IMG/VR virus record: IMGVR_UViG_3300032315_001715
Span: 186,001-250,000 of that record
Reading direction: 5' to 3' (one strand)
Length of the DNA: 64,000 bases
The translations under genes and the position numbers were made by a program. The notes under the pieces are model-generated. The model was given only the letters and a program-made list of their open reading frames with translations. It did not search any database and had not been told where the DNA came from. Position 1 is the first letter of the stretch. Each line of letters begins with the position of its first letter. This document shows positions 2 to 14,229 of the stretch, one piece after another.

Positions 2-382
2 GATCAAAATCAAATCATATGGACACCGGACTCTGAAACATACCCAACACCGACATTGCCTGCCGTTAGTGCCATTGTTGACCCACACACCAGCGGGCCA
101 AACATAAACCTACCAGAAGCCGCCATTGGCCAACGATATCTGTTAACCGAGGATGCATCAGAAAGCAGCGTTGCGTGGGGTGCAATGACCAGCAAGGCCA
201 ACGATATCGTGGAATTTAACGGATCAAACTGGCAAGTGTCGTGGAATGCCGGAGATAACGCCAGTGCATTGGAGTACGTGTTAAACACGAGATCCAATCG
301 AACATACAGATGGCTTAATGGTTATTGGACCACTGTCATCGAGCCAAAGTATCTGCAAGGGTACTGGAGGATCAGCATGTGA
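2..382 (+). CDS. 5'-truncated ORF; C-terminus of a probable tail-completion/neck (gp15-like) virion protein
   Basis: Frame is open from base 2 (DQNQIIWTPDSETYPTPTLPAVSAIVDP...). The IVDPHTSGP..LP.A..GQRYLL and ANDIVEFNGSNW segments resemble C-terminal extensions of jumbo-phage neck proteins (recalled similarity only). Confidence 0.5.
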   Translation, partial: DQNQIIWTPDSETYPTPTLPAVSAIVDPHTSGPNINLPEAAIGQRYLLTEDASESSVAWGAMTSKANDIVEFNGSNWQVSWNAGDNASALEYVLNTRSNRTYRWLNGYWTTVIEPKYLQGYWRISM

Positions 383-1140
383 TGCAGACATCCCTGTTTG
401 AAATCAAAGGATCAATAGATGCCGAGTCGTTCGGCGCGATCTTCACACCAAATATCAAAAAAGTCATTAGGGTGGTAAGAAAGTACGGATTTGATATTCG
501 CGTGATCGGAGGGGCCGTTAGGGACTTTCTTCGCGGCAAAATGCCAAGAGATGTGGATTTTGCGACCAATGCCGAGCCGGCTGAACTGATGTTCATTTTT
601 GATCTCGAGGGCATCGAACATGACGATTGGGGCATTGCACACGGTACCATCAAGGCTGTTTTTGGTGATGAGGTGATTGATGTGACGTCAATCACGTATA
701 AGCTGCGAATTTCCGGTGATCGTATCAAGATAGATCGCAAGGCATCCTGGGAAACTGATGCTGCACGCAGGGATCTAACCATCAACGCAATGAGCGTTGA
801 TATGTACGGTAATTTATATGATTATCGAAACGGCCAAAAGGATTTAGCCGAACAATTGGTTAAATTCAATCCCGATGCGCAGGACAAGATCGACCAGGAC
901 CCATATACCATATTGCGATGGTTCAAGGCACTGGATTTGTTTGACGATCCAAAGTGGTTGAAAAAAGACAAGATGATCATCATGTCAAATGCCAGCAAGG
1001 TTTCGCGGGTTAAAAAAGAAAAACGCACGAGCAAGCTGCTAGCGTCACTGAAGCAGTCCAAAAAATGGCCAAAAATTCTCAAGCTCATGTGCGATACCGG
1101 GGTTGCAAAACAACTTGATCTAACTTGCACCGATGAATAA
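382..1140 (+). CDS. CCA-adding/poly(A) polymerase (class II) family nucleotidyltransferase, short (252 aa), with a degenerate templating motif
   Basis: GGAVRD...DVD (motif A), HGT, and RRDLTINAM. Start placed at ATG 382 (TGATG overlap, GGAGG at 366-370) rather than 325. Confidence 0.85.
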   Translation: MQTSLFEIKGSIDAESFGAIFTPNIKKVIRVVRKYGFDIRVIGGAVRDFLRGKMPRDVDFATNAEPAELMFIFDLEGIEHDDWGIAHGTIKAVFGDEVIDVTSITYKLRISGDRIKIDRKASWETDAARRDLTINAMSVDMYGNLYDYRNGQKDLAEQLVKFNPDAQDKIDQDPYTILRWFKALDLFDDPKWLKKDKMIIMSNASKVSRVKKEKRTSKLLASLKQSKKWPKILKLMCDTGVAKQLDLTCTDE

Positions 1141-1153
1141 CAATTGATATACT
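1125..1153 (+). promoter_or_regulatory. sigma70-type promoter for the glycosylation cluster
   Basis: TTGCAC-N17-TATACT; the ATG at 1160 lies 6 nt after the -10 element. Confidence 0.6.
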
Positions 1154-1159
1154 TGGTCC

Positions 1160-2017
1160 ATGGCGGACCGCACACAGCAAGATCTCATCATTTCAGCATA
1201 TACCAACTATGATTGGTCAAAACTAAAGTATTGGGCAAACAGCATCGATCGATGCGGGTTTACCGGGGATAAGGTCATGATCGTTTATAACAGCGATCCG
1301 GCAACAGTGCAAAAATTAGTTGATCTTGGATTTAAGATCTGGGCCTTTAATCGAGATTCAACTACCGGTAATTTTTTCTGGCCAACCGAACTAATCATAG
1401 TGGTGCAGAGATTTTACCATATGTGGTATTATCTAAATCAGCTTCCAGACGACCATTATCGATATGTCATTACCACCGATGCCAAGGATGTAGTATTCCA
1501 AACCAATCCGGTAAAATGGCTGGAAAACAATCTAGGCAACAAGGACATCGTGGCTAGCTGCGAAAGCATTCGCTACATGCACGAACCATGGGGCGATGAC
1601 AACCTAAATGGTAGCTATCCCATGGTACACCAACAGATGAGAAAAAATCCAATCTGGAATTGCGGAGTACAAGCAGGCCGACAGCGTGCTATCAAGGAGC
1701 TATGGCTACATATATGGTTAATGTGCAAGGCTGGCGGTAGGCCAAATCCTGACCAAGCCGCATATAACGTTCTTCTGGATACCAAAGCATGGAGCGAAAT
1801 AACCAAGTTCTCGATGAGCGAGGATGGGTGGGCTTGCCAGGCAGGTACCACCGTTGATCCAAAAAAGATCAATGATTATCGGTCACATCTGCTGGAAGCA
1901 GAACCAGTTTGGCACGACGGGCTTGCCAAGACCAGCCAGAATCATACACATTCCATCCTGCATCAGTGGGATCGCATACCAACATGGCTTCCGGATATTG
2001 AAAAGAGATATGGATAG
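1160..2017 (+). CDS. Putative GT-A-fold glycosyltransferase
   Basis: YVITTDAKDVVFQTNP DxxD-type motif and NCGV..G motif; first gene of the sugar cluster. Confidence 0.65.
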   Translation: MADRTQQDLIISAYTNYDWSKLKYWANSIDRCGFTGDKVMIVYNSDPATVQKLVDLGFKIWAFNRDSTTGNFFWPTELIIVVQRFYHMWYYLNQLPDDHYRYVITTDAKDVVFQTNPVKWLENNLGNKDIVASCESIRYMHEPWGDDNLNGSYPMVHQQMRKNPIWNCGVQAGRQRAIKELWLHIWLMCKAGGRPNPDQAAYNVLLDTKAWSEITKFSMSEDGWACQAGTTVDPKKINDYRSHLLEAEPVWHDGLAKTSQNHTHSILHQWDRIPTWLPDIEKRYG

Positions 2018-2020
2018 AAA

Positions 2021-3004
2021 ATGGAAACAAATCTACAACAGCTACACCTTGAACAAGAAACTGCCATCAAGACTCCAATACCCATGCCACAATATTTGGC
2101 CGGTAAAAGCATCGTAACCAGTTGTTATCGATCGGAGATTCCTGGTGCTTACATTTTATTAAGCGAGCTGCATCGCCTTGATTTCAACATTCCAATAGAG
2201 GTGTTTTATCGAGAAGGTGAGCTTAATCAAGATGAGATCAGCGAAATGCAAAAGATATCTCCGGGGCAGATAGTCTTTAAAAAGCTGCAAAGCCCTGCAA
2301 TGAATTTTGTTGATAGATGGGGTAACGTCAAGGGATGGAGCACCAAGGTGCTGGCGATATTTGAAAGCCAGTATGAGGAAAATCTATGGATTGATTGTGA
2401 TAATGTTCCGATACGTAACTGCATGGATCTATTCAGTGACACTGAATACCTGCAGAAAGGCTCCATGTTTTGGCGAGACGTGTACAGCATTGATCGTGCT
2501 GATCAATATTGGAGCGGCAGCGACATGTGGAAGATTTTTGATGTAGTGCCTAACGACGGCGAGCCATTTGAAAGCGGACAATTTCTCATCAACAAACCCA
2601 AGGTCTGGTTGCAGTTTTCGTTGATGCACTATTATACCACACGCAACGAAATCTATTATCAGTTCGGCGGAGACGCTGAGTGCTGGCGAATGGCATGGCA
2701 GCGTGTGTCGATATCCCAAAACGGTTATCATTCGAAATTCAACTATCATTCGAGCGATCAAGTTCCATATGGGCTAATGCCGTATGGTCCTTTCCACAAG
2801 GGTGTGCAAAATCCGTGGCACAAATACGGTGGCGGCAGCGTAATGGTACAGAGAGATCGCAAGGGTGACGAGCTGTTTAATCACCGTAATCTAAACAAGT
2901 GGCGATGGAAGGAAGAAAATCCGTTTAACCACGATGTACAAAACGAATTTTCCTACCATGCTATCATGCGACACATCAAATCCAAGTACGGAGTTACCAA
3001 TTAA
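2021..3004 (+). CDS. Mannosyltransferase-like protein (GT71, Mnn1/Mnn2-like)
   Basis: KVLAIFESQYEENLWIDCDN, GSMFWRD, FESGQFLINK and GDAECWRMAW match the K..A...S.FEEVL.LDADN / G..FWPD / ESGQ..I.K / GDKE.F..A pattern. Confidence 0.75.
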   Translation: METNLQQLHLEQETAIKTPIPMPQYLAGKSIVTSCYRSEIPGAYILLSELHRLDFNIPIEVFYREGELNQDEISEMQKISPGQIVFKKLQSPAMNFVDRWGNVKGWSTKVLAIFESQYEENLWIDCDNVPIRNCMDLFSDTEYLQKGSMFWRDVYSIDRADQYWSGSDMWKIFDVVPNDGEPFESGQFLINKPKVWLQFSLMHYYTTRNEIYYQFGGDAECWRMAWQRVSISQNGYHSKFNYHSSDQVPYGLMPYGPFHKGVQNPWHKYGGGSVMVQRDRKGDELFNHRNLNKWRWKEENPFNHDVQNEFSYHAIMRHIKSKYGVTN

Positions 3005-4203
3005 TGGTAGAGATGCTAAGCCGGTTTGTTTATCAGGAAGACTGGAAGGTTTCATATGATCCCGACCGAGAACCGCAAAAGGTGAAGAGAACGCCGGTAC
3101 GACCTAGGCATCTATGGGTATTTGATTTCGAGGAAAACTACGACTGGGATACCATATGGAATGACGCCGTGCAGATCAACAACGACACTGTGCTGTTGAT
3201 TGGTCCGCCGTTGTATGAACATGCTAACTGGTTGCAAACCAATCACCCTCTGTACCTAAAGAGTACCAACCGCACATTACCAATGGAAATACGGGAGCTC
3301 GACCGTACCTGCGTCACCATGGTGAAGGTCCCAGGAATCGTTGACGAGCTGTTTGTGGCAGGTGATCACGGCGAGAAAACCATCAAGGTCAATCAACCAT
3401 CGTTTGATTTTGCCGGAAAAAAGGTCATCGTCACCATCAGCAGGGATCACCCCATCGAGTGGCTGAAGCAGTGGATAGATTATCATCGGATGGTGCACAA
3501 TATTGACGGATTGTTACTTTATAACAATCGCAGCAAGATCTATACCTCGGCAGAACTTGAAGCAGCTATCAGTAGATCCGACATGATGATCAAGGTCGTC
3601 GACTACGACGTACCGTTTGGTTGCATGGGCGGAGGAGATTGGGAATGGCAAGGTAGGAGAGGAACATCCCTGCCGTGGGATAGCGATTTCTCCCAGTATG
3701 TCATGCTGGAACATGCCAAATGGAGATACTTACACTGTGCCGATTTGGTGATTAACGCCGATACCGACGAACTACTATACATAAAACACACCACGCTCGA
3801 CGGCATGTCAGAATATTGCAAGACCAGCTCAAACAGCGTGTGGCTTTACAAGGGCACATGGATAGAACCGGTTGATAGCCTCACCGGTGTTGTTGCTAGT
3901 GATTTATCATTTGACGATCGCAGGTTTGATCGTTACTGGCAAACCAATAATGCCAATCAACGAGGCATTGGTATCAAATGGATGCTTAATCCGCAACGCA
4001 ACATGAGCTACCAATGGCATCTGCATAAAACATTTGGACCACACATGATGACCGATGAGATCGGATTTGGCCACTATCTGGCCATGAATACATCGTGGAG
4101 CTGGCCTCGAGATGGATACCAAGGTGACAAATCAACGCTGGTAGATCATGCGGAAATGAAATCCCATCTGCTGAGATGGAATCCTAAATTTGGAGAAATG
4201 TAA
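3004..4203 (+). CDS. GT92/GT2-like glycosyltransferase
   Basis: WLKQWIDYHRMVHNIDGLLLYNN and a DTDE motif. Confidence 0.65.
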   Translation: MVEMLSRFVYQEDWKVSYDPDREPQKVKRTPVRPRHLWVFDFEENYDWDTIWNDAVQINNDTVLLIGPPLYEHANWLQTNHPLYLKSTNRTLPMEIRELDRTCVTMVKVPGIVDELFVAGDHGEKTIKVNQPSFDFAGKKVIVTISRDHPIEWLKQWIDYHRMVHNIDGLLLYNNRSKIYTSAELEAAISRSDMMIKVVDYDVPFGCMGGGDWEWQGRRGTSLPWDSDFSQYVMLEHAKWRYLHCADLVINADTDELLYIKHTTLDGMSEYCKTSSNSVWLYKGTWIEPVDSLTGVVASDLSFDDRRFDRYWQTNNANQRGIGIKWMLNPQRNMSYQWHLHKTFGPHMMTDEIGFGHYLAMNTSWSWPRDGYQGDKSTLVDHAEMKSHLLRWNPKFGEM

Positions 4204-4856
4204 TGCGCGGAACACTGGTAACCATACACGACAACAACTATGCAAAGCTAGCCGACTTAACGTGGACTAGAAATCGAACACAATATGCGCTGAAACACGG
4301 TTACGATGCCATAGCCAAGACCAGTGGGTTCGATACCTCCATGTCAATCGGCTTTGCTAAGATCGCACTGCTGCTTGAGATCATGCACAAGGGGCAGCAC
4401 GATGTGCTCCACTGGAGTGGCACCGATACGCTGATTACTAATTTTCATATACCATTGTCAGAATTCCTATACGATGGATATCACGTAACCATTGCTACCG
4501 ATTTTAACGGTATCCAAAGCGATAGCTTTGTGATACGCAATACCATGGAAGGTCGGGCATGGTTACAAATGATCATGGATAAAATGCCAGAATATCGAAA
4601 TCATCCATTTCTAGAACAAGGAGTGATGATGGAAACCTATCAACAATATCAACACATCGTCAAGGTTGTTCCGCAGAGATTTTTGAATAGCTATCACTAT
4701 CCCCTTTACAAAAACAAGGGGGCACGCAATAATCATGATAAACTAGGATTTAGCGGACAATGGCATGTTGGTGATTTTTTGATCCATTCTCCGGATCAAC
4801 CCATGCACATACGCATGGACCTATTCAATCAAATACTACCAATGGTGGTTACATAA
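4203..4856 (+). CDS. GT34 (GMA12/MNN10-like) glycosyltransferase
   Basis: FAKIALL, W...DTLITN, DFNGIQSDSFVIRNT, EQ, and W..GDFLIH.P. The DxD motif reads GTD. Confidence 0.7.
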   Translation: MRGTLVTIHDNNYAKLADLTWTRNRTQYALKHGYDAIAKTSGFDTSMSIGFAKIALLLEIMHKGQHDVLHWSGTDTLITNFHIPLSEFLYDGYHVTIATDFNGIQSDSFVIRNTMEGRAWLQMIMDKMPEYRNHPFLEQGVMMETYQQYQHIVKVVPQRFLNSYHYPLYKNKGARNNHDKLGFSGQWHVGDFLIHSPDQPMHIRMDLFNQILPMVVT

Positions 4857-4864
4857 GGATCCTA

Positions 4865-6190
4865 ATGCCAGATATCAGCGCAATCCTCGGTCTCGTCCAG
4901 GAACACATTACTGACAAGCACGCAACAAAGAGCTGGATACCTGGCGTTGATACCGTGCAATATGCCGGACCGTATTTTGACCATCGAGAATATGTCGCAG
5001 CGGTTGAAAGCCTCCTCGGCGGCTGGTTGGTCTTGGGCAAGGATGCACAGAAATTCGAGCACCATTTTCCTAGGCAATTCGGCAAACTACATGGGGTCCT
5101 TACCAACAGCGGCAGTTCCAGCAATTTAATACAAACGAATGCCTTACGCAGCAAGAGGTTATGGAATCTCCCGCAGGGTACCAAGGTGTTGACCCCAATA
5201 GCTGGTTTTCCAACAACCGTTAATCCAATTTTGCAGGTCGGATTTGTACCGGTCTGGGTTGATATCGACCTCGACGGGCTAAATCTCAATCTTGATCATG
5301 TTGAGCAGATCCTCGAGGACGATCCGGAGATACGCGTCATCACCTTTGCGCATGTCCTTGGTAATCCGCCAAACATGGCTCGATTGATGGAACTGGTTCA
5401 AAAACACCAGCTGATACTGCTAGAGGATTGTTGCGACGCGCTTGGCAGCACCTATGATGGAAAACCTCTGGGTAGTTTTGGCGAGATGGCATCCTGTTCG
5501 TTTTACCCTGCACATCACATCACCGGAGGGGAAGGTGGGTTCGTCGCCACTAGAACAGCTGAGCAGGAACAGGTTGTACGGAGCTTCCGTGAGTGGGGTC
5601 GAGGCTGCTACTGCGTCGGACCGAAGGCCAATCTTCTTAAGAATGGTACCTGTGGTTGCCGATTCAAGGAATGGGTTCCGGCCATGCCTGGTGAGATTTT
5701 TGATCACAAATACGTTTATGACGAAATTGGTTATAACTTAAAGCCAATTGAGCTACAGGCCAGCATGTTGTTGGTACAAATGGACAAGCTAGCCGAGATC
5801 GGTGCATTGAGACGCAGAAATCATGCATTGTTGCTTGATATATTCAAGCCTTACGAGCAGTTCTTTCATCTCCCATATGCAACACCGGCAAGCGATCCAA
5901 GCTGGTTTGCGTTTGCTTTAACCATACGAAACGGTGCACCGTTTGATCGCAGGCGATTCGTTGATCATGTCGAAAGCGCTAAGATCCAAACAAGACCGTA
6001 CTTTGCTGGCAACATCATGTTGCAACCAGCATATGATCATCTCGTCGATCCAGTTGCAACCGCTGCAAGATATCCCACGGCTACCAAGGTCATGCGAGAC
6101 ACGTTCTTCCTCGGAACCAGCCCGGTTATCACCATTGAGCAGATCGCGTACATTGGTGAGGTAGTGCGTGGATTCATGGAGACGATCTGA
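4865..6190 (+). CDS. rfbH: NDP-4-keto-6-deoxyglucose 3-dehydrase (RfbH/DdhC, E1), DegT/DnrJ/EryC1/StrS fold
   Basis: TNSGSSSNL, LLEDCCDALGS, SFYPAHHITGGEGG (His in place of the Schiff-base Lys), Cys cluster CYC..TCGCRF, HKYVYDEIGYNLKP. Confidence 0.9.
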   Translation: MPDISAILGLVQEHITDKHATKSWIPGVDTVQYAGPYFDHREYVAAVESLLGGWLVLGKDAQKFEHHFPRQFGKLHGVLTNSGSSSNLIQTNALRSKRLWNLPQGTKVLTPIAGFPTTVNPILQVGFVPVWVDIDLDGLNLNLDHVEQILEDDPEIRVITFAHVLGNPPNMARLMELVQKHQLILLEDCCDALGSTYDGKPLGSFGEMASCSFYPAHHITGGEGGFVATRTAEQEQVVRSFREWGRGCYCVGPKANLLKNGTCGCRFKEWVPAMPGEIFDHKYVYDEIGYNLKPIELQASMLLVQMDKLAEIGALRRRNHALLLDIFKPYEQFFHLPYATPASDPSWFAFALTIRNGAPFDRRRFVDHVESAKIQTRPYFAGNIMLQPAYDHLVDPVATAARYPTATKVMRDTFFLGTSPVITIEQIAYIGEVVRGFMETI

Positions 6191-6816
6191 TGATCAGCAA
6201 ACAAGAGATGATGGATTTTGAGGAAGAAATCGGCTATAGATTCAACAATCGAGAGATACGAGCGCCAATACATCTTTCATCCGGTAACGAGGATCAAATC
6301 ATTAGGATCTTTGCGGAATGTGGCGTTGACATCAACAACGATTGGGTGTGTTGTACATGGCGCAACCATTATCAAGCACTACTCAAGGGGGTGCCAGTTG
6401 ATATTCTACGTGATCAGATCATCTCCGGTAAGAGCATGGTGCTGAATTTACCAGAATACAAGTTTGTTGCATCCAGCATTGTCGGCGGTATCCCTAGCAT
6501 TGCCGTTGGTCTAGCACTGGCAGCAAAGCTTAGGAAGAGCAGCGAGCGAGTATGGTGCTGGACCGGAGACATGAGTGCCGAGACCGGCGCATGGCACGAA
6601 GCATACAAATATTCCGTCAACCACGATTTACCGATTACGTTTGTCGTTGAGGACAACGGTCTCAGCGTTCTAACTCCGACCTCGGAGATATGGGGTCGCC
6701 GCGTGCCGTATTATGCCGCTGACCAGGACTGGTACCAGGATCGACACCTGATTTACTATCGATATACCAACAACAAATGGCCGCATGCCGGTGCCGGGGT
6801 AAGGGTGCAGTTCTAA
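6190..6816 (+). CDS. TPP-dependent enzyme, E1-alpha/transketolase N-terminal-like subunit
   Basis: HLSSGNE, WRNH, SSIVGG, GD..AETGAWHEA...EDN TPP-binding region. Confidence 0.85.
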   Translation: MISKQEMMDFEEEIGYRFNNREIRAPIHLSSGNEDQIIRIFAECGVDINNDWVCCTWRNHYQALLKGVPVDILRDQIISGKSMVLNLPEYKFVASSIVGGIPSIAVGLALAAKLRKSSERVWCWTGDMSAETGAWHEAYKYSVNHDLPITFVVEDNGLSVLTPTSEIWGRRVPYYAADQDWYQDRHLIYYRYTNNKWPHAGAGVRVQF

Positions 6817-7358
6817 TGAGCAATCAGCTATATAACCGTCGACTTCGAGAGGCAATGAATTGGCTCGCCATGCAATCAAATACGGTATTTCTAGGACAAG
6901 CGGTTAGCTATGCCGGCACCGGATGCTACGAAAGCTTGACCGAGATACCATCTGAGAAAAAGATAGAATTTCCTGTTGCTGAAAATTTCCAAATCGGCGT
7001 CAGCATTGGCTTAGCAATGAATGGATTGATTCCGATCAGCGTCGTACCTCGTTGGAATTTTTTGTTGTGTGCTGCTGACCAAATCGTCAATCATCTTGAC
7101 AAGATGTCGTTGCTCAGTGACGGAGGATACCAACCAAAGGTCATCATACGTGTTGCGGTTGGTTCCGAGCATCCCGTTGATCCGCAGGATCAACACAAGG
7201 GTAATTTTTCCCAGGCGTTTCGATTGATGTGCAAGACCGTGGACATAATCGAAGTAACCAATCCAGGATCCATACTATCAGCATATCAGCTGGCATACAA
7301 TCGCACCGACGGCCGCAGCACCATCGTGGTTGAGTTTCCCGATTACATGAAGGACTGA
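6816..7358 (+). CDS. TPP-dependent enzyme, E1-beta/pyrimidine-binding subunit (no C-terminal domain)
   Basis: VFLGQAV, IEFPVAE..Q.G.SIGLA..G, DQIVNH, QH. ATG 6816 overlaps the upstream TAA. Confidence 0.85.
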   Translation: MSNQLYNRRLREAMNWLAMQSNTVFLGQAVSYAGTGCYESLTEIPSEKKIEFPVAENFQIGVSIGLAMNGLIPISVVPRWNFLLCAADQIVNHLDKMSLLSDGGYQPKVIIRVAVGSEHPVDPQDQHKGNFSQAFRLMCKTVDIIEVTNPGSILSAYQLAYNRTDGRSTIVVEFPDYMKD

Positions 7359-7360
7359 AT

Positions 7361-7390
7361 TTGCAAGGCCGAGCCAACGACTGTTACTAT
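7361..7390 (+). promoter_or_regulatory. Internal sigma70-type promoter
   Basis: TTGCAA-N18-TACTAT with an extended -10 TG, in the only sizeable gap of the cluster. Confidence 0.45.
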
Positions 7391-7408
7391 TGATAATATT
7401 TGGAGAAA

Positions 7409-8248
7409 ATGGTGGACGATCCGGTGATATTAATGACAGGTGCTGCTGGCATCGTCGGACGAGTGCTGTCGAGAGAACTTGCGCATCGACGCATCATCGG
7501 AATTAACAGCATTGATGCCGATCTATCCGATACGGCACAATTCTCAAGCATCATGGATAGATATCAACCTGACGTTCTCCTGCACTGCGCTGCTAGGGGA
7601 GGACGCCAACCAGCCGGTATCTTTAATCAAGATGACCTGATAAACAATCTACAGATAGTTGAAAACATAAGGTATCACCGTGATCGATTTAAACAGATCA
7701 TCAATATATCCAGCGGTGCTGAGTATGGTCTAGAACGTGCAATCGTCGATGTTGAGGAAATTTGGTTAAATCGCAACATGTATCCCCTACCAACTGATAG
7801 CTACGGATTGTCAAAGAGAATTTCATGGCAGATTTTTGAAGATATGGAGAATGCGATTAATGTTCGCATATTTGGTTGCTTTGATCCAACCGAATCCGAT
7901 TCTAGACTGTTGAGAAGATTTGTCAATTGTAAGACCAAGAAACAGGGAAATTTCCAATTACGCCACGATCGTCCGTTCAGTTGGATATCCATGGTTGATC
8001 TAGCCACGGTCATTGACTCGATCGTTGAGAACGGCGCACCAAGCACCATTAACGTTGCATATCCAGAAACTGCGTCCATGCTGTTAAGTGACTTTCTCAA
8101 TCGATGGTGCAAAATACACGGTGTTCCGCCGGATTACGAGATCGTTGATGAGATTGGACTTTCGTACACATGCAACAGTGCTATCATGCAATCTCTCATC
8201 AACCGACCGTTAAGGGGACTGGATGCTTGCCTAAAGGATTACACATGA
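7409..8248 (+). CDS. NAD-dependent epimerase/reductase (extended SDR)
   Basis: TGAAGIVG, HCAA, SSGAEYG, YGLSK. RBS GGAGA precedes ATG 7409. Confidence 0.85.
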   Translation: MVDDPVILMTGAAGIVGRVLSRELAHRRIIGINSIDADLSDTAQFSSIMDRYQPDVLLHCAARGGRQPAGIFNQDDLINNLQIVENIRYHRDRFKQIINISSGAEYGLERAIVDVEEIWLNRNMYPLPTDSYGLSKRISWQIFEDMENAINVRIFGCFDPTESDSRLLRRFVNCKTKKQGNFQLRHDRPFSWISMVDLATVIDSIVENGAPSTINVAYPETASMLLSDFLNRWCKIHGVPPDYEIVDEIGLSYTCNSAIMQSLINRPLRGLDACLKDYT

Positions 8249-9195
8249 CCAAAAAGGTTGTTTACATAACCGGTTGCCTAGGATTTATCGGTAGCTACAT
8301 CACCAGGAGTTGCCTCGACCGAGGTTGGTACGTGATGGGCATTGACTATGAGACCTATGCGGCAAATACGGAATATCTACAGGAGTTTAGTGGTTACGAA
8401 AACTTCACGTATCAACATAAAAATATCAATGATCTCAATATGCTTTATGACTGTGATTACATCATTAATACCGCAGCAGAGACCCATGTAGATAACAGCA
8501 TCGTCAACAGCAACGAGTTCATCCGTAGCAACATCGACGGCGTGCATAATCTTCTCAGATTGATACAAACCAAAAGCAGATTTCAAATGCCAACGCTGGT
8601 ACACTTCAGCACCGACGAAGTCTATGGCGATCTTGTTAATGGCAGCCACACCGAAAAGGATCTAATGAGGCCGAGCAATCCGTATTCGGCGACCAAGGCC
8701 AGCGCCGATATGCTGGTGCTAGCTTGGCATAGAACATATGGAATACCATACATCATCGTCCGTCCGACCAATAACTACGGTACCGGGCAATATGTTGAAA
8801 AATTCATACCAAAGGCCTGCAAGAGCCTCATGTTGGGACGAAAGTTACCAATGCACGAAAACGGTACTCCTATTAGAACTTGGCTACATGCACAGGATAC
8901 CGCAGATGCGGTGATCTTCCTGATAGAAAGCGGTAAGACCAATGACATATACAACATCAGCGGAAACTATGAAGATACCAATCTAAACGTGTTTAAAAAA
9001 ATACTTTCGTCTCACGGTGTAGATCCTGATTCATACTTGAAGCACGTTGATTTTTCATTTACGAGGCCCGGGCAAGACGTGCGCTACAGCGTCGATGACA
9101 CAAAACTGAGAAGCATCGGTTGGACGAATTCTAGATCGTTTGATGATGAGATACCAGCAATCGTCGCATACTATCGGTCTCGATTCATATGGTAA
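8245..9195 (+). CDS. rfbB: dTDP-glucose 4,6-dehydratase
   Basis: TGCLGFIG, AAETHVDNSI, STDEVYG, PSNPYSATK, NNYG, RPGQDVRYSVD. ATGA overlap at 8245. Confidence 0.9.
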   Translation: MTKKVVYITGCLGFIGSYITRSCLDRGWYVMGIDYETYAANTEYLQEFSGYENFTYQHKNINDLNMLYDCDYIINTAAETHVDNSIVNSNEFIRSNIDGVHNLLRLIQTKSRFQMPTLVHFSTDEVYGDLVNGSHTEKDLMRPSNPYSATKASADMLVLAWHRTYGIPYIIVRPTNNYGTGQYVEKFIPKACKSLMLGRKLPMHENGTPIRTWLHAQDTADAVIFLIESGKTNDIYNISGNYEDTNLNVFKKILSSHGVDPDSYLKHVDFSFTRPGQDVRYSVDDTKLRSIGWTNSRSFDDEIPAIVAYYRSRFIW

Positions 9196-10064
9196 ATCCC
9201 GTTATTGCGGTGCGATTTGGGCCCAAGGATGGTATCGTTGTTCGATGGCAGCTTAGAAATGCTCCTATAGCCAAGAGATGGCTAGCGTCATTGAAACAGG
9301 CTTTACCATACGGCATAAATGAACGAGATCGCATCTACAACATGCCAATACAACCATGGAATCGAAATACCATATGTGAAGAATTAACTGATTGCATGTC
9401 AAAAATTGAACGATTCTATCCAGATTTCTTTGATGTATGGCCAACACCTACAATGGATCATGAATCCACTAACGTAATGCATCTAGCATTTGAAAAACTA
9501 AGGGGATCCATTGAAGTTCCATCGGAACTCTATATCAATGCCCCGTATGATGTGCAAATGGAAATATGTCGGTACAATGTACTGATACACCGTTGGGAAA
9601 GCTTCGTGGGCAAAGGACCGCCCAGGGTGGTATGCACATTTAATAAGCCGTTTCGAACACCGTTGCTAGATGACGATTATTCATATTTTTCCGTCGGGCA
9701 CACATACGGAGCGCTGACGATCAATTATCCACAAGTTGGGAAACAACTGCTAGACGTATATCGAGATGATGATATGGTCGTCAGTGCCAAAGCCATAAGA
9801 CCCATGGATCATTATGCCGCTGGATTTGTTGCCCGATTTTTTGAAATCAATACCAATGCTACTGATTCAATTCTCGAATCGTTTGACAAATGGTATGACA
9901 CTAACCATACACACATGTTATCCCTTGGATTTGATCGAGATGATCCAAGGCTCGCCATAGGTTACATACAGGTAGCTGATCTAATCGAGGATCGCGATAG
10001 GACCGCGATGCTTTACAGCATTGGAAAGTCCGGTATAATCGGTGATGTTTGGATCGAAGAATGA
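9189..10064 (+). CDS. Hypothetical protein in the sugar cluster
   Basis: 291-aa ORF overlapping both neighbours; no motif recognised. Confidence 0.7.
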   Translation: MVNPVIAVRFGPKDGIVVRWQLRNAPIAKRWLASLKQALPYGINERDRIYNMPIQPWNRNTICEELTDCMSKIERFYPDFFDVWPTPTMDHESTNVMHLAFEKLRGSIEVPSELYINAPYDVQMEICRYNVLIHRWESFVGKGPPRVVCTFNKPFRTPLLDDDYSYFSVGHTYGALTINYPQVGKQLLDVYRDDDMVVSAKAIRPMDHYAAGFVARFFEINTNATDSILESFDKWYDTNHTHMLSLGFDRDDPRLAIGYIQVADLIEDRDRTAMLYSIGKSGIIGDVWIEE

Positions 10065-10768
10065 AAATAGCCCTACAGATCAGTGGTCGATTGCGATATA
10101 CCGCCGAAAGCATCGGATCTATCATGGCTAGCATTGTTGAGACGCACCAACCTGATATATTCTGTTCTTTTTGGAATGCAGAGAATGACGCAACTTTGAA
10201 AAATTGGTCAGACTATCTCAATCCCCTGTTGATCGAAACCGAAGATCAATCGTTGATAAGACCGTATCTAGACGAACTATTTCAATTTAATGTGCATGCT
10301 AACATGCCGAGCATGAGCTATAAGTTCCATCGAGTGTCAGCCATTCGACAGGCATACGAACGAGCAAACGATGTTAGATATGATGTTGTCATACAAGCTC
10401 GTGCCGACAACATATTCTTTGAAAAGCTTTCAGTTGACATGTTGTCAACGGTGTCAGACGCCGGCATCTATTGCGCCAACGGCAGCATCAACAGCACCAT
10501 AGACCCATATGTACGCCCAAGGATGGTTGATAACTTCTATCTTGGAGATCCTGCCAGCATTGATCTAGCTGCTAGCACATTCTGGCATCTAAGGCGACAG
10601 GCCCAGGAATATACCGCTGCCGGTATGTTGCATCATGTCAGGATTCCCGAAATAATACAAAGCAAGATATGGAATGATCTTGGCATCAATATTCGTCCAT
10701 TGCCAGGAAACAATCCATTTGGTAACTTCCATTACGATATAGATCGGCGTGACACGCCATGGAGATGA
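10061..10768 (+). CDS. Glycosyltransferase-like protein (MKIAL..SG..R family)
   Basis: MKIALQISGRLR N-terminus and YDVVIQARAD. ATGA overlap at 10061. Confidence 0.55.
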   Translation: MKIALQISGRLRYTAESIGSIMASIVETHQPDIFCSFWNAENDATLKNWSDYLNPLLIETEDQSLIRPYLDELFQFNVHANMPSMSYKFHRVSAIRQAYERANDVRYDVVIQARADNIFFEKLSVDMLSTVSDAGIYCANGSINSTIDPYVRPRMVDNFYLGDPASIDLAASTFWHLRRQAQEYTAAGMLHHVRIPEIIQSKIWNDLGINIRPLPGNNPFGNFHYDIDRRDTPWR

Positions 10769-10769
10769 T

Positions 10770-11738
10770 ATGAAGCTGCTGTATGTGGTACACCGATATG
10801 CACCGTACCCAGGAGGATCTGAAATCTATGTGCAAAACATGGCGGAAGAAAGCCTGCGCCGAGGTCACGAAGTTGCGGTGTTTGCTGGAGAACACCAAGG
10901 AGATTACAACGGTGTTAGGGTATCCAGTGATACCAACATCTTGCTATATAACTGGGACCTAATCATCGTCCATGGTGGAGACGTCAATGTACAGAATTTC
11001 GTTCTTTCCAATGCTAGGCGCATACCTAGCCCTGTGCTTTATCTTCTTGTTCTACCTAGTAACAGCGATGTTTGTGTTAAGGCTCTGCATGATTGCCAAT
11101 GGATCGGATGCAGCACGCTCGCTGACTGGCAACACTGCCAGCAGCACAACGTCAACCACAAGGCCGTCGAAATAAAGCACGGGATCGATTGGACAACGTC
11201 AATCGGCAGTACCGGGTTTAAGACCAAGCACGGCATTACCAAGCGGATGTTCCTAAGCTGTGGCGGGTACTGGCCAAACAAGGCCATGCGGAGGCTAGCT
11301 GATATATTTGAAGCGGCCGATATGCCTGATTCCGTGCTGGTAACCACCGGTTATGATAATCGGATGGATCTCATGCCCGCATCTCGAGGCAGCGTCATTC
11401 CAATGTTGATTGATGATCGCAACGAGGTACTGTCAGCAATGCATGACGCCGATTGCGTGATCATGCACAGCACCTCTGAAGGATTTGGGCTAGTTCTATT
11501 GGAGTCCATGCTTAATCAAACTCCGTGGATTGCCAGAAGCATAGCCGGAGCTGAATTTTTACACAGCAAAGGACACGGGCTAACATATCATAGTGATGAA
11601 GAATTAATGGCAATGCTCAGAGGGTTCAATCGAGGGCAGTTTGATATCAAGGGGGCATATGAATACGTGACAGCAAATCATTTGATATCAAACACGGTGT
11701 CTGATATAGAATCCGTTGCTAGCCGTAAAAGTTCCTAA
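10770..11738 (+). CDS. GT4 (GT-B fold) glycosyltransferase
   Basis: HRYAPYPGGSE...A..GHEVAV and EGFGLVLLESM (E-x7-E). Confidence 0.85.
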   Translation: MKLLYVVHRYAPYPGGSEIYVQNMAEESLRRGHEVAVFAGEHQGDYNGVRVSSDTNILLYNWDLIIVHGGDVNVQNFVLSNARRIPSPVLYLLVLPSNSDVCVKALHDCQWIGCSTLADWQHCQQHNVNHKAVEIKHGIDWTTSIGSTGFKTKHGITKRMFLSCGGYWPNKAMRRLADIFEAADMPDSVLVTTGYDNRMDLMPASRGSVIPMLIDDRNEVLSAMHDADCVIMHSTSEGFGLVLLESMLNQTPWIARSIAGAEFLHSKGHGLTYHSDEELMAMLRGFNRGQFDIKGAYEYVTANHLISNTVSDIESVASRKSS

Positions 11739-12420: not shown

Positions 12421-13287
12421 CTAGGACGATGTTCGGCTTTTTAATATCTGATCAACGTAGTCGAATGGTTCCTTGCGTGGAGCGTCTCGTTTTAGATATC
12501 TATTTGCAGCCGGGATCGATCCGGTCCTAGAAAGCATATCACTATGTGTGCCAACGTTTTTGTTTTTTGGATTGAAAATCTTGTCCTCAACAAACGAAAC
12601 AAATTGTTTCGAACCGTTATTTTGTATGAATCGCTTGATCACATTGCTCAATGTGTCAATGCACTGATGATATGCTGCTGAATCAAACGGAGTTGATTGC
12701 GGACCGGTACCAAACAATCGCTGCCAGTCACTTTTAAACATGCCACCGGTACGTTGCACGTTATCCTTGAACAGTCCGGGATTGTCATATTGCGGAAAAT
12801 CAGCCCACAATGACTGTGGAACTATACCTAATGGTTCGCTTACGGTGACGAAATACACCGGATATTTGTTATCATTTATGATCTTGTTGTAGCTCTTGTA
12901 CAATCCTCGTGATGCACCGGCCCAAGGTTTGGTCTTTGCACAGGGAACAAATGCAACCATTGAATATTTGTCTGGAACCTTATACGCCGCTATCTCATCG
13001 TGCCATGCTTTTATAATTGGATTGTTTAAGAGGTGGATGGTTTCACCTGGGGTGTATGCGGTTAGTTCTGTATCTAACGACGGGTTTGATGCCAGGCTAC
13101 GATCTACCAGGAATCGTCGGAATCTTGGCCAGTCTTCGCGTGATATGAATCCCGGTGTTCCCAGTTGCCCAAGTTCAACCGAACTAAGTTTTGAGAATGC
13201 TGCGGTTGATTCTGCTGGAGAAAGTTCGTGCGAAGATTGAGGTTTAACGGACTTGATCGAAGCTTCTAATATTTCTGATATTCTCAT
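12421..13287 (-). CDS. DUF5591/archaeosine synthase (ArcS)-like protein with an MRISEILE N-terminus
   Basis: FVPCAKTKPW and VSEPLGIVP...YDNPG match the LLPCSA.KPY and TSPLGVVP...YD.P pattern. Confidence 0.7.
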   Translation of the reverse strand: MRISEILEASIKSVKPQSSHELSPAESTAAFSKLSSVELGQLGTPGFISREDWPRFRRFLVDRSLASNPSLDTELTAYTPGETIHLLNNPIIKAWHDEIAAYKVPDKYSMVAFVPCAKTKPWAGASRGLYKSYNKIINDNKYPVYFVTVSEPLGIVPQSLWADFPQYDNPGLFKDNVQRTGGMFKSDWQRLFGTGPQSTPFDSAAYHQCIDTLSNVIKRFIQNNGSKQFVSFVEDKIFNPKNKNVGTHSDMLSRTGSIPAANRYLKRDAPRKEPFDYVDQILKSRTSS

Positions 13288-13300: not shown

Positions 13301-13368
13301 AAATCAACAACATACCCCTGCTTGATTTATTGGTATAAATGCTGCACACTTTAATTAGAGGTATGCTT

Positions 13369-14229
13369 ATGAAATTCACATGCATGGAATGCGGCCGAGA
13401 ATTTGACCAGATAACGGGCAAACACGTTAAAACGCACGGATTCAACACCGTAGCAGAATATCTTGAAAAACATCCTGGTGCCCAAACCGTCCAAGAACGC
13501 AAGGACTCCAAGGAAACCATCGAGCGAAAACGGATCGCCCGCCTTGGTAAGAAGCATAGCGACGAGGCCAAGGCACGCATAGGCGCCGGCAACAAGGGCA
13601 AGAAGATGAGTGCGGAAGCCATTGATAAATGGCGAGAGTCCTACAGGGAGTATCTCGACGAGCACGGAAGCCCCATGCTGGGCAAGGATCGCGGTGAGGC
13701 CTTCAAGGCAAAGATGAGTGCCATCGCCAAGGCACGGCCCAAGGAACTGGTCGATGCCAAGGTCGCGCAGATGCTGGCTGCGCGACGTGGCAGCAAGGCC
13801 ACTCCTGAGCAGAGGGAGAGGTATAGTGAAGCTCGATTAAAGTTCATTGCAGAAAATCCTGATAAGATGTTACCAAGATTATTCAATACAAAGCCTGAAC
13901 GAGAATTCAAAACGGTGTTAGATGAGATGAACATCTCATACAAACATAATGTTCGCGTTGGTAACAGATTGTATGATTTCCAAATTGGAACAAATGTTTT
14001 GATAGAGCTAGATGGCCCGTTTCATTACAATTATAAAATGTATGGTGATAAATCAATGCCAGACGAAGATCGCATGGCACTGTTTCTAGAAGCCAAAAAG
14101 AAGGACGAATACAAAACGGAATTAGCTAAATCGAACGGATATGTCTTGTATCGAATTATCGTTGGTGGCAATCTTCCTGATGATTGGAAAGCACAGCTTG
14201 AAAATCAAGGTTGCACTCTATTCAAATAA
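13369..14229 (+). mobile_element. Free-standing homing endonuclease (Zn-finger + NUMOD3-like repeats + DUF559/Vsr-like nuclease)
   Basis: CMECGREF...HVKTHG, KKHSDEAKARIG, TKPEREF, YDFQIG..LIELDGPFH. AGAGG RBS before ATG 13369. Confidence 0.75.

What the first reader, a model, noticed from the sequence alone, without database searches (positions are those of the whole stretch)
4865..9195. Enzyme set for a branched-chain 3,6-dideoxysugar (yersiniose-like)
Seen: a 4,6-dehydratase (TDE/YSATK); an E1-type 3-dehydrase identified by His replacing Lys (SFYPAHH) plus Fe-S cysteines; a split TPP alpha/beta pair whose beta lacks the C-terminal domain; and an SDR. Known: DdhC/RfbH makes 4-keto-3,6-dideoxyhexose; TPP enzymes (YerE, and E1-like AviB1/B2) add a pyruvate-derived C2 branch at C4; SDRs (YerF) reduce it. 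Inference: the phage makes a dTDP-linked C4-branched 3,6-dideoxyhexose. The E3 reductase (DdhD) and the sugar-1-P nucleotidyltransferase are absent from the window and would need to come from the host or elsewhere in the genome.
Basis: partly seen in the sequence, partly recalled or inferred. Interest (0 to 1): 0.72.

Follow-up and report, generated by a model that had tools for sequence, protein, structure and literature searches.

The report
Phage genes for a branched dideoxy-sugar
A 453-kb freshwater jumbo phage carries a tightly linked five-gene set, shared by dozens of uncultured phages, that most likely turns a nucleotide-glucose into a rare 3,6-dideoxy sugar with a two-carbon branch, using an unusually small thiamine enzyme not yet described in viruses.

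Summary
Window 4865-9195 holds five co-directional, overlapping genes:
- an E1/RfbH-type 3-dehydrase with His in place of Lys and all four [2Fe-2S] cysteines;
- a 208-aa E1-alpha-like ThDP subunit;
- a 180-aa E1-beta-like subunit with only the pyrimidine-binding domain;
- an extended SDR;
- an RmlB-type 4,6-dehydratase.

Six or seven glycosyltransferase-like genes flank the set.

In 46 non-redundant viral loci, the 4,6-dehydratase, 3-dehydrase, both ThDP subunits and the SDR stay together in at least three gene orders. About ten loci replace the Fe-S dehydrase with a His-containing, cysteine-free relative. At least two complete loci have no dehydrase at all. The ThDP pair, RmlB and SDR are kept in both cases, so the ThDP pair works on the keto-sugar and is not just an electron donor for the dehydrase.

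Best reading (about 0.5): a yersiniose-like pathway in which a minimal alpha-keto-acid-dehydrogenase-type carboligase replaces YerE.

The nucleotide carrier (dTDP or UDP), the acyl donor, the SDR's exact step and the glycan's acceptor are not settled. The whole phage genome has no E3-like reductase and no RmlA-type transferase.

I rate it a new variant of a known kind, of moderate to high interest.

The parts
4865..6190 (+). E1/RfbH-type PMP- and [2Fe-2S]-dependent NDP-4-keto-6-deoxyhexose 3-dehydrase (441 aa)
   Evidence: NCBIfam RfbH 429.8 bits, over the cut-off of 423. PDB 3bcx 1.3e-92, with H220, C193, C251, C253 and C261 conserved.
6190..6816 (+). ThDP enzyme alpha subunit (208 aa): the diphosphate-binding (PP) domain of the E1-alpha type, with the C-terminal part missing
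   Evidence: E1_dh 1.3e-14 covering profile positions 6-171 of 300. PDH E1-alpha TIGR03182 65 bits against transketolase 29 bits. GD...N motif conserved. 2386 homologues.
6816..7358 (+). ThDP enzyme beta subunit (180 aa from the ATG at 6816; the ORF opens at 6777): pyrimidine-binding (Pyr) domain only, no C-terminal domain
   Evidence: Transket_pyr 9-163 of 174. PDH E1-beta 4.2e-9, with the catalytic Glu aligned. Predicted alpha-beta complex ipSAE 0.89 against a best control of 0.00; that mark was reached by 51 of 78 solved complexes and 2 of 108 mismatched pairs.
7409..8248 (+). Extended SDR (279 aa), a nucleotide-sugar ketoreductase-like protein
   Evidence: Epimerase 5.1e-16. AlphaFold model pLDDT 95. 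Best folds are GDP-L-fucose synthase (TM 0.83) and RmlD (TM 0.80). Ser/Tyr/Lys triad conserved.
8245..9195 (+). RmlB-type NDP-glucose 4,6-dehydratase (316 aa from the ATG at 8245)
   Evidence: TIGR01181 285 bits; CDP-type TIGR02622 only 60 bits. PDB RmlB structures down to 8e-63. STDE and YSATK motifs.
1160..4856 (+). Four consecutive GT-A-type glycosyltransferase-like genes: 1160-2017, 2021-3004, 3004-4203, 4203-4856
   Evidence: PLOD-GT (weak), Mannosyl_trans3 7.8e-22, GT92 (weak), GT34 1.6e-14. Same order in the 485-kb relative L008.
9189..10064 (+). 291-aa protein of unknown function inside the operon
   Evidence: No Pfam or PHROG match. Atlas scores under 0.55. Conserved only in L008.
10049..10768 (+). 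DUF7796-like protein, probably a GT-A-like transferase
   Evidence: Atlas feature score 0.98 to phage DUF7796 clusters, whose models resemble GT8, WavE and GT92 proteins. phrog_13607.
10749..11738 (+). GT4-family (GT-B) glycosyltransferase, the last gene of the operon
   Evidence: Glyco_trans_1_4 5.6e-9, Glycos_transf_1 8.3e-8.

Best explanation
The five genes form a nucleotide-sugar tailoring cassette that makes an NDP-3,6-dideoxy-4-C-(two-carbon-branched) hexose of the yersiniose type. The flanking glycosyltransferases then put this sugar into a phage-directed glycan.

Proposed steps:
1. Host NDP-glucose (dTDP- or UDP-) is oxidised and dehydrated by the RmlB-like enzyme to NDP-4-keto-6-deoxyglucose. 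Step inferred from family membership.
2. The E1-type dehydrase, with PMP and a [2Fe-2S] cluster, removes the C3 hydroxyl. Electrons come from a host ferredoxin or flavodoxin reductase pair, as for SpnQ, because the phage has no E3. The family and its residues are shown here; the electron source is inferred.
3. The minimal alpha-beta ThDP enzyme decarboxylates a 2-oxo acid, most likely pyruvate, and adds the activated acyl unit to the C4 ketone. This gives a tertiary alcohol with an acetyl branch. Inferred from gene linkage and from the known chemistry of the alpha-keto-acid-dehydrogenase-2 superfamily.
4. The SDR reduces the remaining carbonyl to give the 1-hydroxyethyl branch. Inferred; this is the weakest step.
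For: Residue-level match of the dehydrase to Yersinia E1.

Linkage. In 46 non-redundant viral loci with at least 5 kb on each side, within 8 kb of the ThDP alpha gene I found RmlB in 45, a 3-dehydrase in 43, ThDP-beta in 46 and the SDR in 45. At least three different gene orders occur.

Conservation. The ThDP subunits are among the best-conserved members of the set (median 64% identity to the window, as for the dehydrase, against 29% for the SDR; 78% and 75% against 66% and 58% in the L005 comparison).

Independence from the Fe-S cluster.
- About ten loci carry an E1-like enzyme that keeps the catalytic His but has no Fe-S cysteines, which is the ColD logic with no reductant needed. They still keep the ThDP pair.
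- Two complete 20-kb loci have no DegT-like gene at all but keep RmlB, the ThDP pair and the SDR.
- So the pair's constant partners are the makers and users of a 4-keto sugar.

The ThDP pair looks functional. ThDP/Mg motif and catalytic Glu are present. A heterodimer is predicted, 0.89 against controls of 0.00. Natural alpha-beta fusions exist. It is closer to 2-oxo-acid dehydrogenase E1 than to transketolase.

Bacterial members of the same short family (44-50% identity) lie inside NDP-sugar clusters. One has an aldo-keto reductase, the family of the paulomycin branch reductase Pau7, and a malic enzyme, which makes pyruvate, next to the pair (PMC4753412).

Enzymes of this superfamily are documented to branch keto sugars with pyruvate: AviB1/B2, Pau11/12, aldgamycin, and KbDH-alpha/beta in vitro (PMC12247030, PMC4425429).

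The missing beta C-terminal domain and alpha C-terminal part fit an enzyme that no longer serves a lipoyl-E2 complex (established knowledge of PDH E1; inference).
Against: - No biochemical data exist for any member of this short family. PHROG 34187 is listed as 'unknown function'.
- The SDR's nearest folds are C4-ketoreductases and epimerase-reductases (GDP-fucose synthase, RmlD). RmlB + 3-dehydrase + such a reductase already make up a complete colitose- or abequose-type pathway without any ThDP step.
- The more distant homologues in SAR11 and in cyanophages sit with SIS isomerase, sugar kinase and nucleotidyltransferase genes. That context would also suit a transketolase-like role on sugar phosphates.
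- The acyl donor is unknown.
- The known sugar-branching alpha/beta enzymes are full length (325 and 345 aa), and I could not test whether the short family groups with them.
Confidence: 0.5

Rival explanations
1. The cassette makes a plain 3,6-dideoxyhexose (abequose-, paratose-, colitose- or ascarylose-like). RmlB, the 3-dehydrase and the SDR, acting as a C4 reductase, would be the whole pathway. The ThDP pair would do something else for the same glycan, for example make a non-sugar substituent or a precursor.
For: The SDR model is closest to GDP-L-fucose synthase (TM 0.83) and RmlD (TM 0.80), both C4 reductases of NDP-4-keto-6-deoxy sugars. The trio mirrors Gmd/ColD/ColC (PMC8987622). Cyanophage S-H68 has RmlB, RmlC, SDRs and an E1-like dehydrase with no ThDP gene.
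Against: The ThDP pair is among the best-conserved and most constantly linked parts of the set (46 of 46 loci). It sits between the dehydrase and the SDR in most gene orders. It stays with RmlB and the SDR even where the dehydrase is absent. No other substrate-supplying gene is conserved beside it.
Confidence: 0.17
2. The ThDP pair does branch or extend the sugar, but not with a pyruvate-derived acetyl group. It might transfer glycolaldehyde from a ketose phosphate, as a transketolase does, or a longer 2-oxo-acid-derived chain, as ErwE and MMAR_2332 do. In distant relatives it might act on sugar phosphates before nucleotide activation.
For: The fold superfamily is shared with transketolase; a split transketolase is a weak PDB hit at 1.3e-3. 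SAR11, Verrucomicrobiota and cyanophage homologues lie next to SIS isomerase, GHMP or carbohydrate kinase and nucleotidyltransferase genes. One homologue is fused to an APH-type kinase. Split transketolases are proposed to make hydroxyacetyl branches, and YerE-like enzymes use C4-C8 donors (PMC12247030).
Against: Scores favour 2-oxo-acid dehydrogenase E1 over transketolase: 65 against 29 bits for alpha, and E1-beta models only for beta. A malic enzyme lies next to the pair in one bacterial locus. The one characterised alpha/beta brancher, KbDH, is restricted to pyruvate (PMC12247030).
Confidence: 0.15
3. The ThDP pair stands in for the missing E3 reductase. It would oxidise pyruvate and pass the electrons of hydroxyethyl-ThDP to the [2Fe-2S] cluster of the dehydrase, making C3 deoxygenation independent of host reductases.
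For: The 453-kb genome has no E3-type domains and no flavodoxin. The dehydrase gene directly precedes the alpha gene in the window and in many loci. E1-type enzymes can reduce artificial acceptors, for example acetoin:DCPIP oxidoreductase (PMC12247030).
Against: The pair is retained where the dehydrase has lost all Fe-S cysteines and where there is no dehydrase at all. Bacterial homologues sit with ordinary DegT-family genes, whose active-site residues I did not inspect. There is no precedent for an E1-alpha/beta enzyme donating to a protein Fe-S cluster (own knowledge).
Confidence: 0.06

Closest known systems
Yersiniose A pathway of Yersinia pseudotuberculosis (DdhA, DdhB, DdhC/E1, DdhD/E3, YerE, YerF)
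   Same: The order of chemistry is the same: 4,6-dehydration, PMP/[2Fe-2S] C3 deoxygenation, ThDP-dependent C2 addition at the C4 ketone, then reduction. The dehydrase is a clear E1 homologue with all catalytic and cluster residues.
   Different: There is no DdhA and no DdhD. The 4,6-dehydratase is RmlB-type, not CDP-type, so the carrier is probably not CDP. The ThDP enzyme is a two-subunit E1-like protein, not the single-chain AHAS-like flavoprotein YerE. The setting is a phage operon with GT-A-type transferases, not an O-antigen cluster.
Sugar-branching alpha-keto-acid dehydrogenase-2 enzymes of actinomycete antibiotics (AviB1/AviB2, Pau11/Pau12, aldgamycin AlmDI/DII, KbDH-alpha/beta)
   Same: They are two subunits homologous to PDH E1 alpha and beta, encoded beside NDP-4-keto-sugar genes. 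Genetics, and in vitro work for KbDH, show they install an acetyl branch from pyruvate on a keto sugar (PMC12247030, PMC4425429).
   Different: The known enzymes are full length (Pau11 325 aa, Pau12 345 aa). The phage proteins are 208 and 180 aa: beta has no C-terminal domain and alpha matches only the first 57% of the E1_dh profile. The hosts are phages and planktonic bacteria rather than actinomycete secondary-metabolite clusters. I did not test whether the two groups are related beyond the superfamily level.
ColD / SpnQ (other NDP-sugar 3-dehydratases)
   Same: SpnQ also has the Fe-S motif, acts on a dTDP-sugar and uses general cellular reductases instead of a dedicated E3. That is the model for how the phage enzyme could work without E3. 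The cysteine-free variants in about ten related phages follow ColD logic (PMC8987622).
   Different: The window enzyme is much closer to Yersinia E1 (1.3e-92) than to ColD (about 1e-45). Even the cysteine-free phage variants are closer to E1 (4e-57) than to ColD (about 1e-40).
Fused 'transketolase central region-containing protein' of cyanophages P-TIM68 and S-SM2 (PHROG 34187)
   Same: It is the same short ThDP family (37-38% identity to alpha), here as one alpha-beta chain, inside phage sugar-nucleotide clusters.
   Different: Its neighbours are a Zn-alcohol dehydrogenase, a carbohydrate kinase, a phosphoheptose-isomerase-like gene and nucleotidyltransferases. No E1-type dehydrase was found nearby. 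Its function has never been assigned.

Membership tests
E1 / DdhC / RfbH 3-dehydrase | DegT/aspartate-aminotransferase fold with His replacing the cofactor-binding Lys | tested here: met
   SFYPAHH aligns to E1 H220 of 3bcx; 3bb8 is the H220K mutant. The His is kept in all 84 family members examined.
E1 / DdhC / RfbH 3-dehydrase | Four cysteines that bind the [2Fe-2S] cluster (C193, C251, C253, C261 of Yersinia E1) | tested here: met
   All four align to Cys in the window protein. Cluster binding itself cannot be tested with these tools.
E1 / DdhC / RfbH 3-dehydrase | Score above the curated family cut-off | tested here: met
   NF011936 429.8 bits against a cut-off of 423.
E1 / DdhC / RfbH 3-dehydrase | A dedicated E3 (DdhD) reductase partner | tested here: not met
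   No PF00175, PF00111, PF00970 or PF00258 in the 452,799-bp genome. SpnQ shows that this partner is dispensable (PMC8987622).
RmlB dTDP-glucose 4,6-dehydratase | Extended SDR with GxxGxxG, the TDE acid/base pair and YxxxK | tested here: met
   GCLGFIGS, STDE and YSATK are read. PDB RmlB hits down to 8e-63.
RmlB dTDP-glucose 4,6-dehydratase | Equivalog-level score, which would imply dTDP specificity | tested here: not met
   TIGR01181 285 bits against a cut-off of 365. Nucleotide specificity remains open.
Sugar-branching alpha-KADH2 ThDP enzymes (AviB1/B2 type) | Two subunits homologous to E1 alpha (PP domain) and E1 beta (Pyr domain) that assemble | tested here: met
   Pfam, NCBIfam and PDB matches. 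Predicted complex 0.89 against a best control of 0.00 (mark reached by 51 of 78 solved complexes and 2 of 108 mismatched pairs; a like complex is solved, so this shows likeness). Natural fusions exist.
Sugar-branching alpha-KADH2 ThDP enzymes (AviB1/B2 type) | ThDP/Mg-binding motif in alpha and cofactor-activating Glu in beta | tested here: met
   G126 and N156 invariant and D127 nearly invariant in 17 diverse homologues. The beta Glu of FPVAE aligns to the PDH E1-beta Glu.
Sugar-branching alpha-KADH2 ThDP enzymes (AviB1/B2 type) | Full-length E1 architecture (about 325 and 345 aa, beta with C-terminal domain) | tested here: not met
   208 and 180 aa. E1_dh profile covered 6-171 of 300. No Transketolase_C. 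Pau11/12 sizes from PMC4425429.
Sugar-branching alpha-KADH2 ThDP enzymes (AviB1/B2 type) | Encoded next to enzymes that make an NDP-keto-sugar | tested here: met
   RmlB within 8 kb in 45 of 46 loci.
Sugar-branching alpha-KADH2 ThDP enzymes (AviB1/B2 type) | Groups phylogenetically with AviB1/B2, Pau11/12 or KbDH rather than with metabolic E1s | not tested
Sugar-branching alpha-KADH2 ThDP enzymes (AviB1/B2 type) | Pyruvate-dependent acyl transfer to a keto sugar | not testable with these tools
   This needs an enzyme assay.
YerE (AHAS-like ThDP flavoprotein) | Single chain of the decarboxylase superfamily with N-terminal, middle (FAD) and C-terminal ThDP domains | tested here: not met
   Only E1_dh and Transket_pyr match strongly. 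TPP_enzyme_C is weak and below its cut-off; there is no TPP_enzyme_N or _M. The pair may work like YerE but is not a member.
GDP-fucose synthase / ColC epimerase-reductase | SDR triad plus the Cys/His acid-base pair for epimerisation | tested here: inconclusive
   The fold is closest to GDP-fucose synthase (TM 0.83) and the triad is conserved. The residue two positions after the catalytic Ser is a nearly invariant Ala, where, from my own knowledge, GDP-fucose synthase has Cys. I made no residue-level structural superposition.

The most novel reading that the evidence does not exclude
The minimal ThDP pair has two jobs. Besides branching the sugar, or instead of it in the Fe-S-bearing phages, it would oxidise pyruvate and feed electrons to the [2Fe-2S] cluster of the E1-type dehydrase. 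That would give the phage a self-contained, pyruvate-driven C3 deoxygenation without an E3 or any host reductase. The evidence disfavours this as the pair's only role, because the pair persists without the cluster and without the dehydrase. It does not exclude it as an added role.
Probability: 0.05. Interest if true: 0.85.

Novelty: new variant of a known kind. Interest (0 to 1): 0.62.

Why it matters
If the reading is right, these would be the first viral genes found for a C-branched deoxysugar. Such sugars are otherwise known from a few O-antigens and from actinomycete antibiotics. The cassette is not a one-off. The alpha subunit has 2386 database relatives, and the set is syntenic in dozens of uncultured freshwater and marine T4-like and jumbo phages, so an unrecognised glycan may be common on phage-infected cells or on virions in plankton.

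The 208 + 180 aa enzyme would be the smallest known member of the keto-sugar-branching ThDP carboligases. A 2025 review notes that no structure exists for this group and names viruses as an unexplored source (PMC12247030). That makes it attractive for structural work and for biocatalytic synthesis of tertiary alcohols.

The natural swaps seen here (Fe-S dehydrase, cysteine-free dehydrase, no dehydrase) provide a ready comparative series for working out the pathway.

Tried and rejected
- **Near-identical or cultured relatives.** Megablast of the cassette against 50,697 phage records found nothing. tblastn with the alpha subunit found only eight records, all at 38% identity or less.
- **DNA glycosylation as the target.** The genome has no thymidylate-synthase-like hydroxymethylase, so 5-hydroxymethyl-pyrimidine glycosylation is unlikely. 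The GTP cyclohydrolase I, QueD and QueE-like neighbours in one clade are a 7-deazaguanine module, not part of the sugar set.
- **A hidden E3 among conserved unknown neighbours.** The recurrent unknown families look like GT-A transferases, a methyltransferase or QueE. None is cysteine-rich or flavoprotein-like, and only two have weak copies in this genome.
- **T4 late promoters.** TATAAATA occurs once in 64 kb, against 2 expected. The sigma-70 and terminator scan was uninformative: 11 promoter-like sites against 28 expected.
- **tRNA genes in the window.** None found.
- **Context of the closest 50%-cluster representatives.** P0122 and P0123 lie on contigs too short to be useful.
- **Exact-protein look-ups for three MAG loci.** These failed. 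I replaced them with ORF calling and Pfam.
- **Expression evidence.** No RNA run holds the sequence, so I did not use read laying.
- **The 'moraphage' jumbo-phage paper (PMC12619734).** It mentions glycosyltransferases only in general terms.

Full report
**Setting.** The window is bases 186,001-250,000 of a 452,799-bp IMG/VR virus record that CheckV rates as complete. It is a T4-like jumbo myovirus. A gp23-type major capsid gene lies at 14317-15519(-), with 77% identity to Sinorhizobium phage Phosso and 69% to the PA5oct group. Apart from its probable source sample, public runs that hold small parts of the cassette are lake-water and freshwater metagenomes.

**The observation.** From 325 to 11738 the + strand carries thirteen abutting or overlapping genes.
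- The finding's span, 4865-9195, holds five of them.
- 4865-6190 is an E1/RfbH 3-dehydrase. It scores above the curated RfbH cut-off (429.8 against 423 bits). It aligns to the Yersinia E1 structure 3bcx at 1.3e-92, with His220 and the cluster ligands Cys193, Cys251, Cys253 and Cys261 all identical.
- 6190-6816 is a 208-aa E1-alpha-like ThDP subunit. It covers only positions 6-171 of the 300-position E1_dh profile and keeps the GD...N cofactor motif.
- 6816-7358 is a 180-aa E1-beta-like subunit with the pyrimidine-binding domain alone and the cofactor-activating Glu.
- 7409-8248 is an extended SDR with an intact Ser/Tyr/Lys triad.
- 8245-9195 is an RmlB-type 4,6-dehydratase with STDE and YSATK.
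One addition: the alpha subunit is truncated too.
- Around the five genes lie four GT-A-like transferases upstream. Downstream lie a protein of unknown function, a DUF7796 GT-A-like protein and a GT4.

**Is the set a unit?**
- The alpha subunit has 2386 relatives at E <= 1e-5 in the 5.8-billion-protein collection. The best 120 are all 67-85% identical and 202-214 aa long, many on contigs of 150-485 kb.
- At 50% clustering there are 77 clusters at E <= 1e-30.
- I fetched 80 viral loci and mapped the window's proteins onto them.
- In 46 non-redundant loci with at least 5 kb on both sides, within 8 kb of the alpha gene I found ThDP-beta in 46, RmlB in 45, the SDR in 45 and a 3-dehydrase in 43. 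At least three different gene orders occur.
- The flanks are not conserved. No other family occurs in more than 22 of 85 loci, and the recurrent ones are mostly glycosyltransferases of varied families: GT34, GT2, GT4, GT10, GT-D-like.
- The ThDP subunits are among the best-conserved members. Their median identity to the window is 64%, as for the dehydrase, against 29% for the SDR. In the L005 comparison they score 78% and 75%, against 66% for the dehydrase and 58% for RmlB.
- The closest relative, on a 485-kb contig, has the whole operon in the same order.

**Natural variants that discriminate between models.**
- Of 84 dehydrase-family proteins in these loci, 66 keep His plus all the cluster cysteines.
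- Ten loci instead carry a 380-386-aa enzyme that keeps the catalytic His but has none of the cysteines. It is still closer to E1 (4e-57) than to ColD (about 1e-40).
- By the logic established for ColD, such an enzyme deoxygenates C3 without any reductase (PMC8987622).
- These loci keep RmlB, the ThDP pair and the SDR.
- Two complete 20-kb loci have no DegT-like gene at all, even at E = 10, yet keep RmlB, the pair and the SDR.
- Two conclusions follow. C3 deoxygenation is a frequent step, maintained by two enzyme types, so a 4-keto-3,6-dideoxy intermediate in the window's phage is well supported. The ThDP pair's constant partners are the enzyme that makes the 4-keto sugar and the SDR, not the Fe-S cluster.

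**The ThDP pair.**
- It scores better against 2-oxo-acid dehydrogenase E1 models than against transketolase: 65 against 29 bits for alpha, and only E1-beta models for beta (PDB).
- The two chains are predicted to bind. The score is 0.89 with a best control of 0.00; that mark was reached by 51 of 78 solved complexes and 2 of 108 mismatched pairs. Solved E1 complexes exist, so this shows likeness and not proof of binding.
- The predicted interface includes the beta segment around the catalytic Glu.
- Natural single-chain alpha-beta fusions occur. PHROG 34187, the fused form, is listed as 'unknown function'.
- The parts that are missing are, in PDH-type E1 enzymes, those that deal with the E2 component and its lipoyl arm (established knowledge; inference for this protein). 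That fits a free-standing carboligase.
- Enzymes of this superfamily are known to branch keto sugars. AviB1/B2, Pau11/12 and the aldgamycin enzymes are supported by genetics and feeding. KbDH-alpha/beta is shown in vitro, with pyruvate as the only donor (PMC12247030, PMC4425429, PMC4753412).
- Those enzymes are full length (325 and 345 aa), and all known examples come from actinomycete antibiotic clusters. The 2025 review names viruses as unexplored.

**Bacterial members of the short family.**
- A scan of one genome per prokaryote species found only seven loci at 44-50% identity. They are in SAR11, SAR116, Verrucomicrobiota, a gammaproteobacterium and one unclassified MAG. Everything else was ordinary PDH or acetoin E1 at 35% identity or less.
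- I annotated three of the seven. All three are NDP-sugar clusters with a GHMP kinase; the other components vary (NTP_transferase, SDRs, a DegT-family gene, an RmlC-like gene, a B12-radical SAM enzyme, glycosyltransferases).
- One of them has an aldo-keto reductase directly upstream of alpha and a malic enzyme downstream. The paulomycin branch ketoreductase Pau7 is an aldo-keto reductase (PMC4753412), and malic enzyme produces pyruvate. This is suggestive but circumstantial.
- The SIS-isomerase and kinase neighbours in SAR11 and in cyanophages leave room for a role on sugar phosphates in those distant members.

**The SDR.**
- A confident model (pLDDT 95) is closest to GDP-L-fucose synthase (TM 0.83) and RmlD (TM 0.80). 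So it is a nucleotide-sugar ketoreductase-type protein.
- This is the main weakness of the branched-sugar reading, because RmlB, a 3-dehydrase and a C4 reductase already form a complete 3,6-dideoxyhexose pathway.
- Against that simpler reading stands the universal retention of the ThDP pair.
- Reduction of the exocyclic branch carbonyl by a diverged C4-reductase-type SDR is plausible but unproven.

**What the phage lacks and has elsewhere.**
- The whole genome has no PF00483 nucleotidyltransferase, no E3-type domains and no flavodoxin.
- The Fe-S dehydrase must therefore use host reductants, as SpnQ does (PMC8987622).
- The starting NDP-glucose must also come from the host, unless a 523-aa NTP_transf_3-kinase fusion at genome position 329,977-331,548 supplies it.
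- The dehydratase is RmlB-like (285 bits) rather than CDP-type (60 bits). The carrier is therefore probably dTDP or UDP, and I cannot tell which.
- The genome also holds a PglC-like phosphoglycosyl transferase at 76,303-76,929 but no WecA-type enzyme.
- The glycan's acceptor, whether virion protein or a lipid-linked host-surface glycan, remains open. Glycosylation of hydroxymethyl-pyrimidine DNA is unlikely.

**Verdict.**
This estimate is my own judgement, as is a figure of roughly 0.85 for production of an NDP-4-keto-3,6-dideoxyhexose.
- In chemistry the closest system is the yersiniose pathway. In enzyme type the closest are the AviB1/B2-class branchers.
- It differs from both in using a minimal two-subunit ThDP enzyme, in pairing an E1-type dehydrase with an RmlB-type dehydratase, in lacking E3, and in being a phage-borne, widely distributed module.
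- I found no publication describing it.

Noticed in passing
G000:C1:76303-76929 (-), outside the window (locus L183:4303-4929): The phage encodes a 208-aa PglC-like polyprenyl-phosphate phosphoglycosyl transferase (Bac_transf, 1.8e-59). It sits beside a PRPP synthetase, a CTP synthase, a radical SAM protein and a weak DUF7796 protein. This suggests the phage can start a lipid-linked glycan in the host.
   Followed up: partly
G000:C1:325900-335776 (locus L177:3900-13776): A second sugar-like cluster. It holds two DUF6071 proteins, a DUF7796 protein, a GatZ/KbaZ-like aldolase, a shikimate-dehydrogenase-like protein, a 523-aa NTP_transf_3 + APH-kinase fusion (possibly an anomeric kinase and nucleotidyltransferase), a cupin, a radical SAM protein and a carbamoyltransferase.
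   Followed up: partly
Loci L120, L131, L135, L145, L156, L158, L164, L165, L168, L170 (e.g. L135:7871-9031): In these related phages the Fe-S E1 dehydrase is replaced by a 380-386-aa E1-like enzyme that keeps the catalytic His but has no cluster cysteines. This looks like an independent, E1-derived route to ColD-like chemistry.
   Followed up: yes
L016:8934-15140 (uncultured bacterium MAG, 588-kb contig): In this bacterial locus the short ThDP pair lies between an aldo-keto reductase and a GHMP kinase, followed by two GT2 genes and a malic enzyme. These could be a branch reductase and a pyruvate supply encoded next to the carboligase.
   Followed up: partly
Proteins P0162, P0154, P0215 (homologues of window 6190-6816): Some alpha-subunit homologues are interrupted by an intein or a LAGLIDADG element. 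One is fused to an APH-type kinase domain.
   Followed up: no
window 12421-13287 (-): A 288-aa protein with a weak DUF5591 match (the archaeosine tRNA-guanine transglycosylase-associated domain). A related phage clade has GTP cyclohydrolase I, QueD-like and QueE-like genes next to the sugar cassette, which hints at 7-deazaguanine metabolism in this group.
   Followed up: partly
window 13339-14229 (+): An HNH or homing-endonuclease-like gene lies directly beside the major capsid gene (14317-15519, - strand). The genome's family-B DNA polymerase is split by an intein (G000 294228-298566).
   Followed up: no
window 325-1140 (+): The first gene of the operon is a 271-aa protein with a CCA-adding enzyme or poly(A) polymerase head domain. 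It is kept in the same position in the 485-kb relative L008. The window has no tRNA genes.
   Followed up: no
window 48997-60027 (+) and 21754-25989 (-): Very long ORFs of 3676 aa and 1411 aa. I did not examine them. They may be fibre or other virion proteins that could accept glycans.
   Followed up: no
G000:C1:390891-391892 (-) and 298642-299646 (-): Two further extended-SDR genes outside the window. The first lies next to FkbM-type and CmcI/rhamnosyl-O-methyltransferase-like methyltransferases, which suggests yet another sugar-tailoring site.
   Followed up: no
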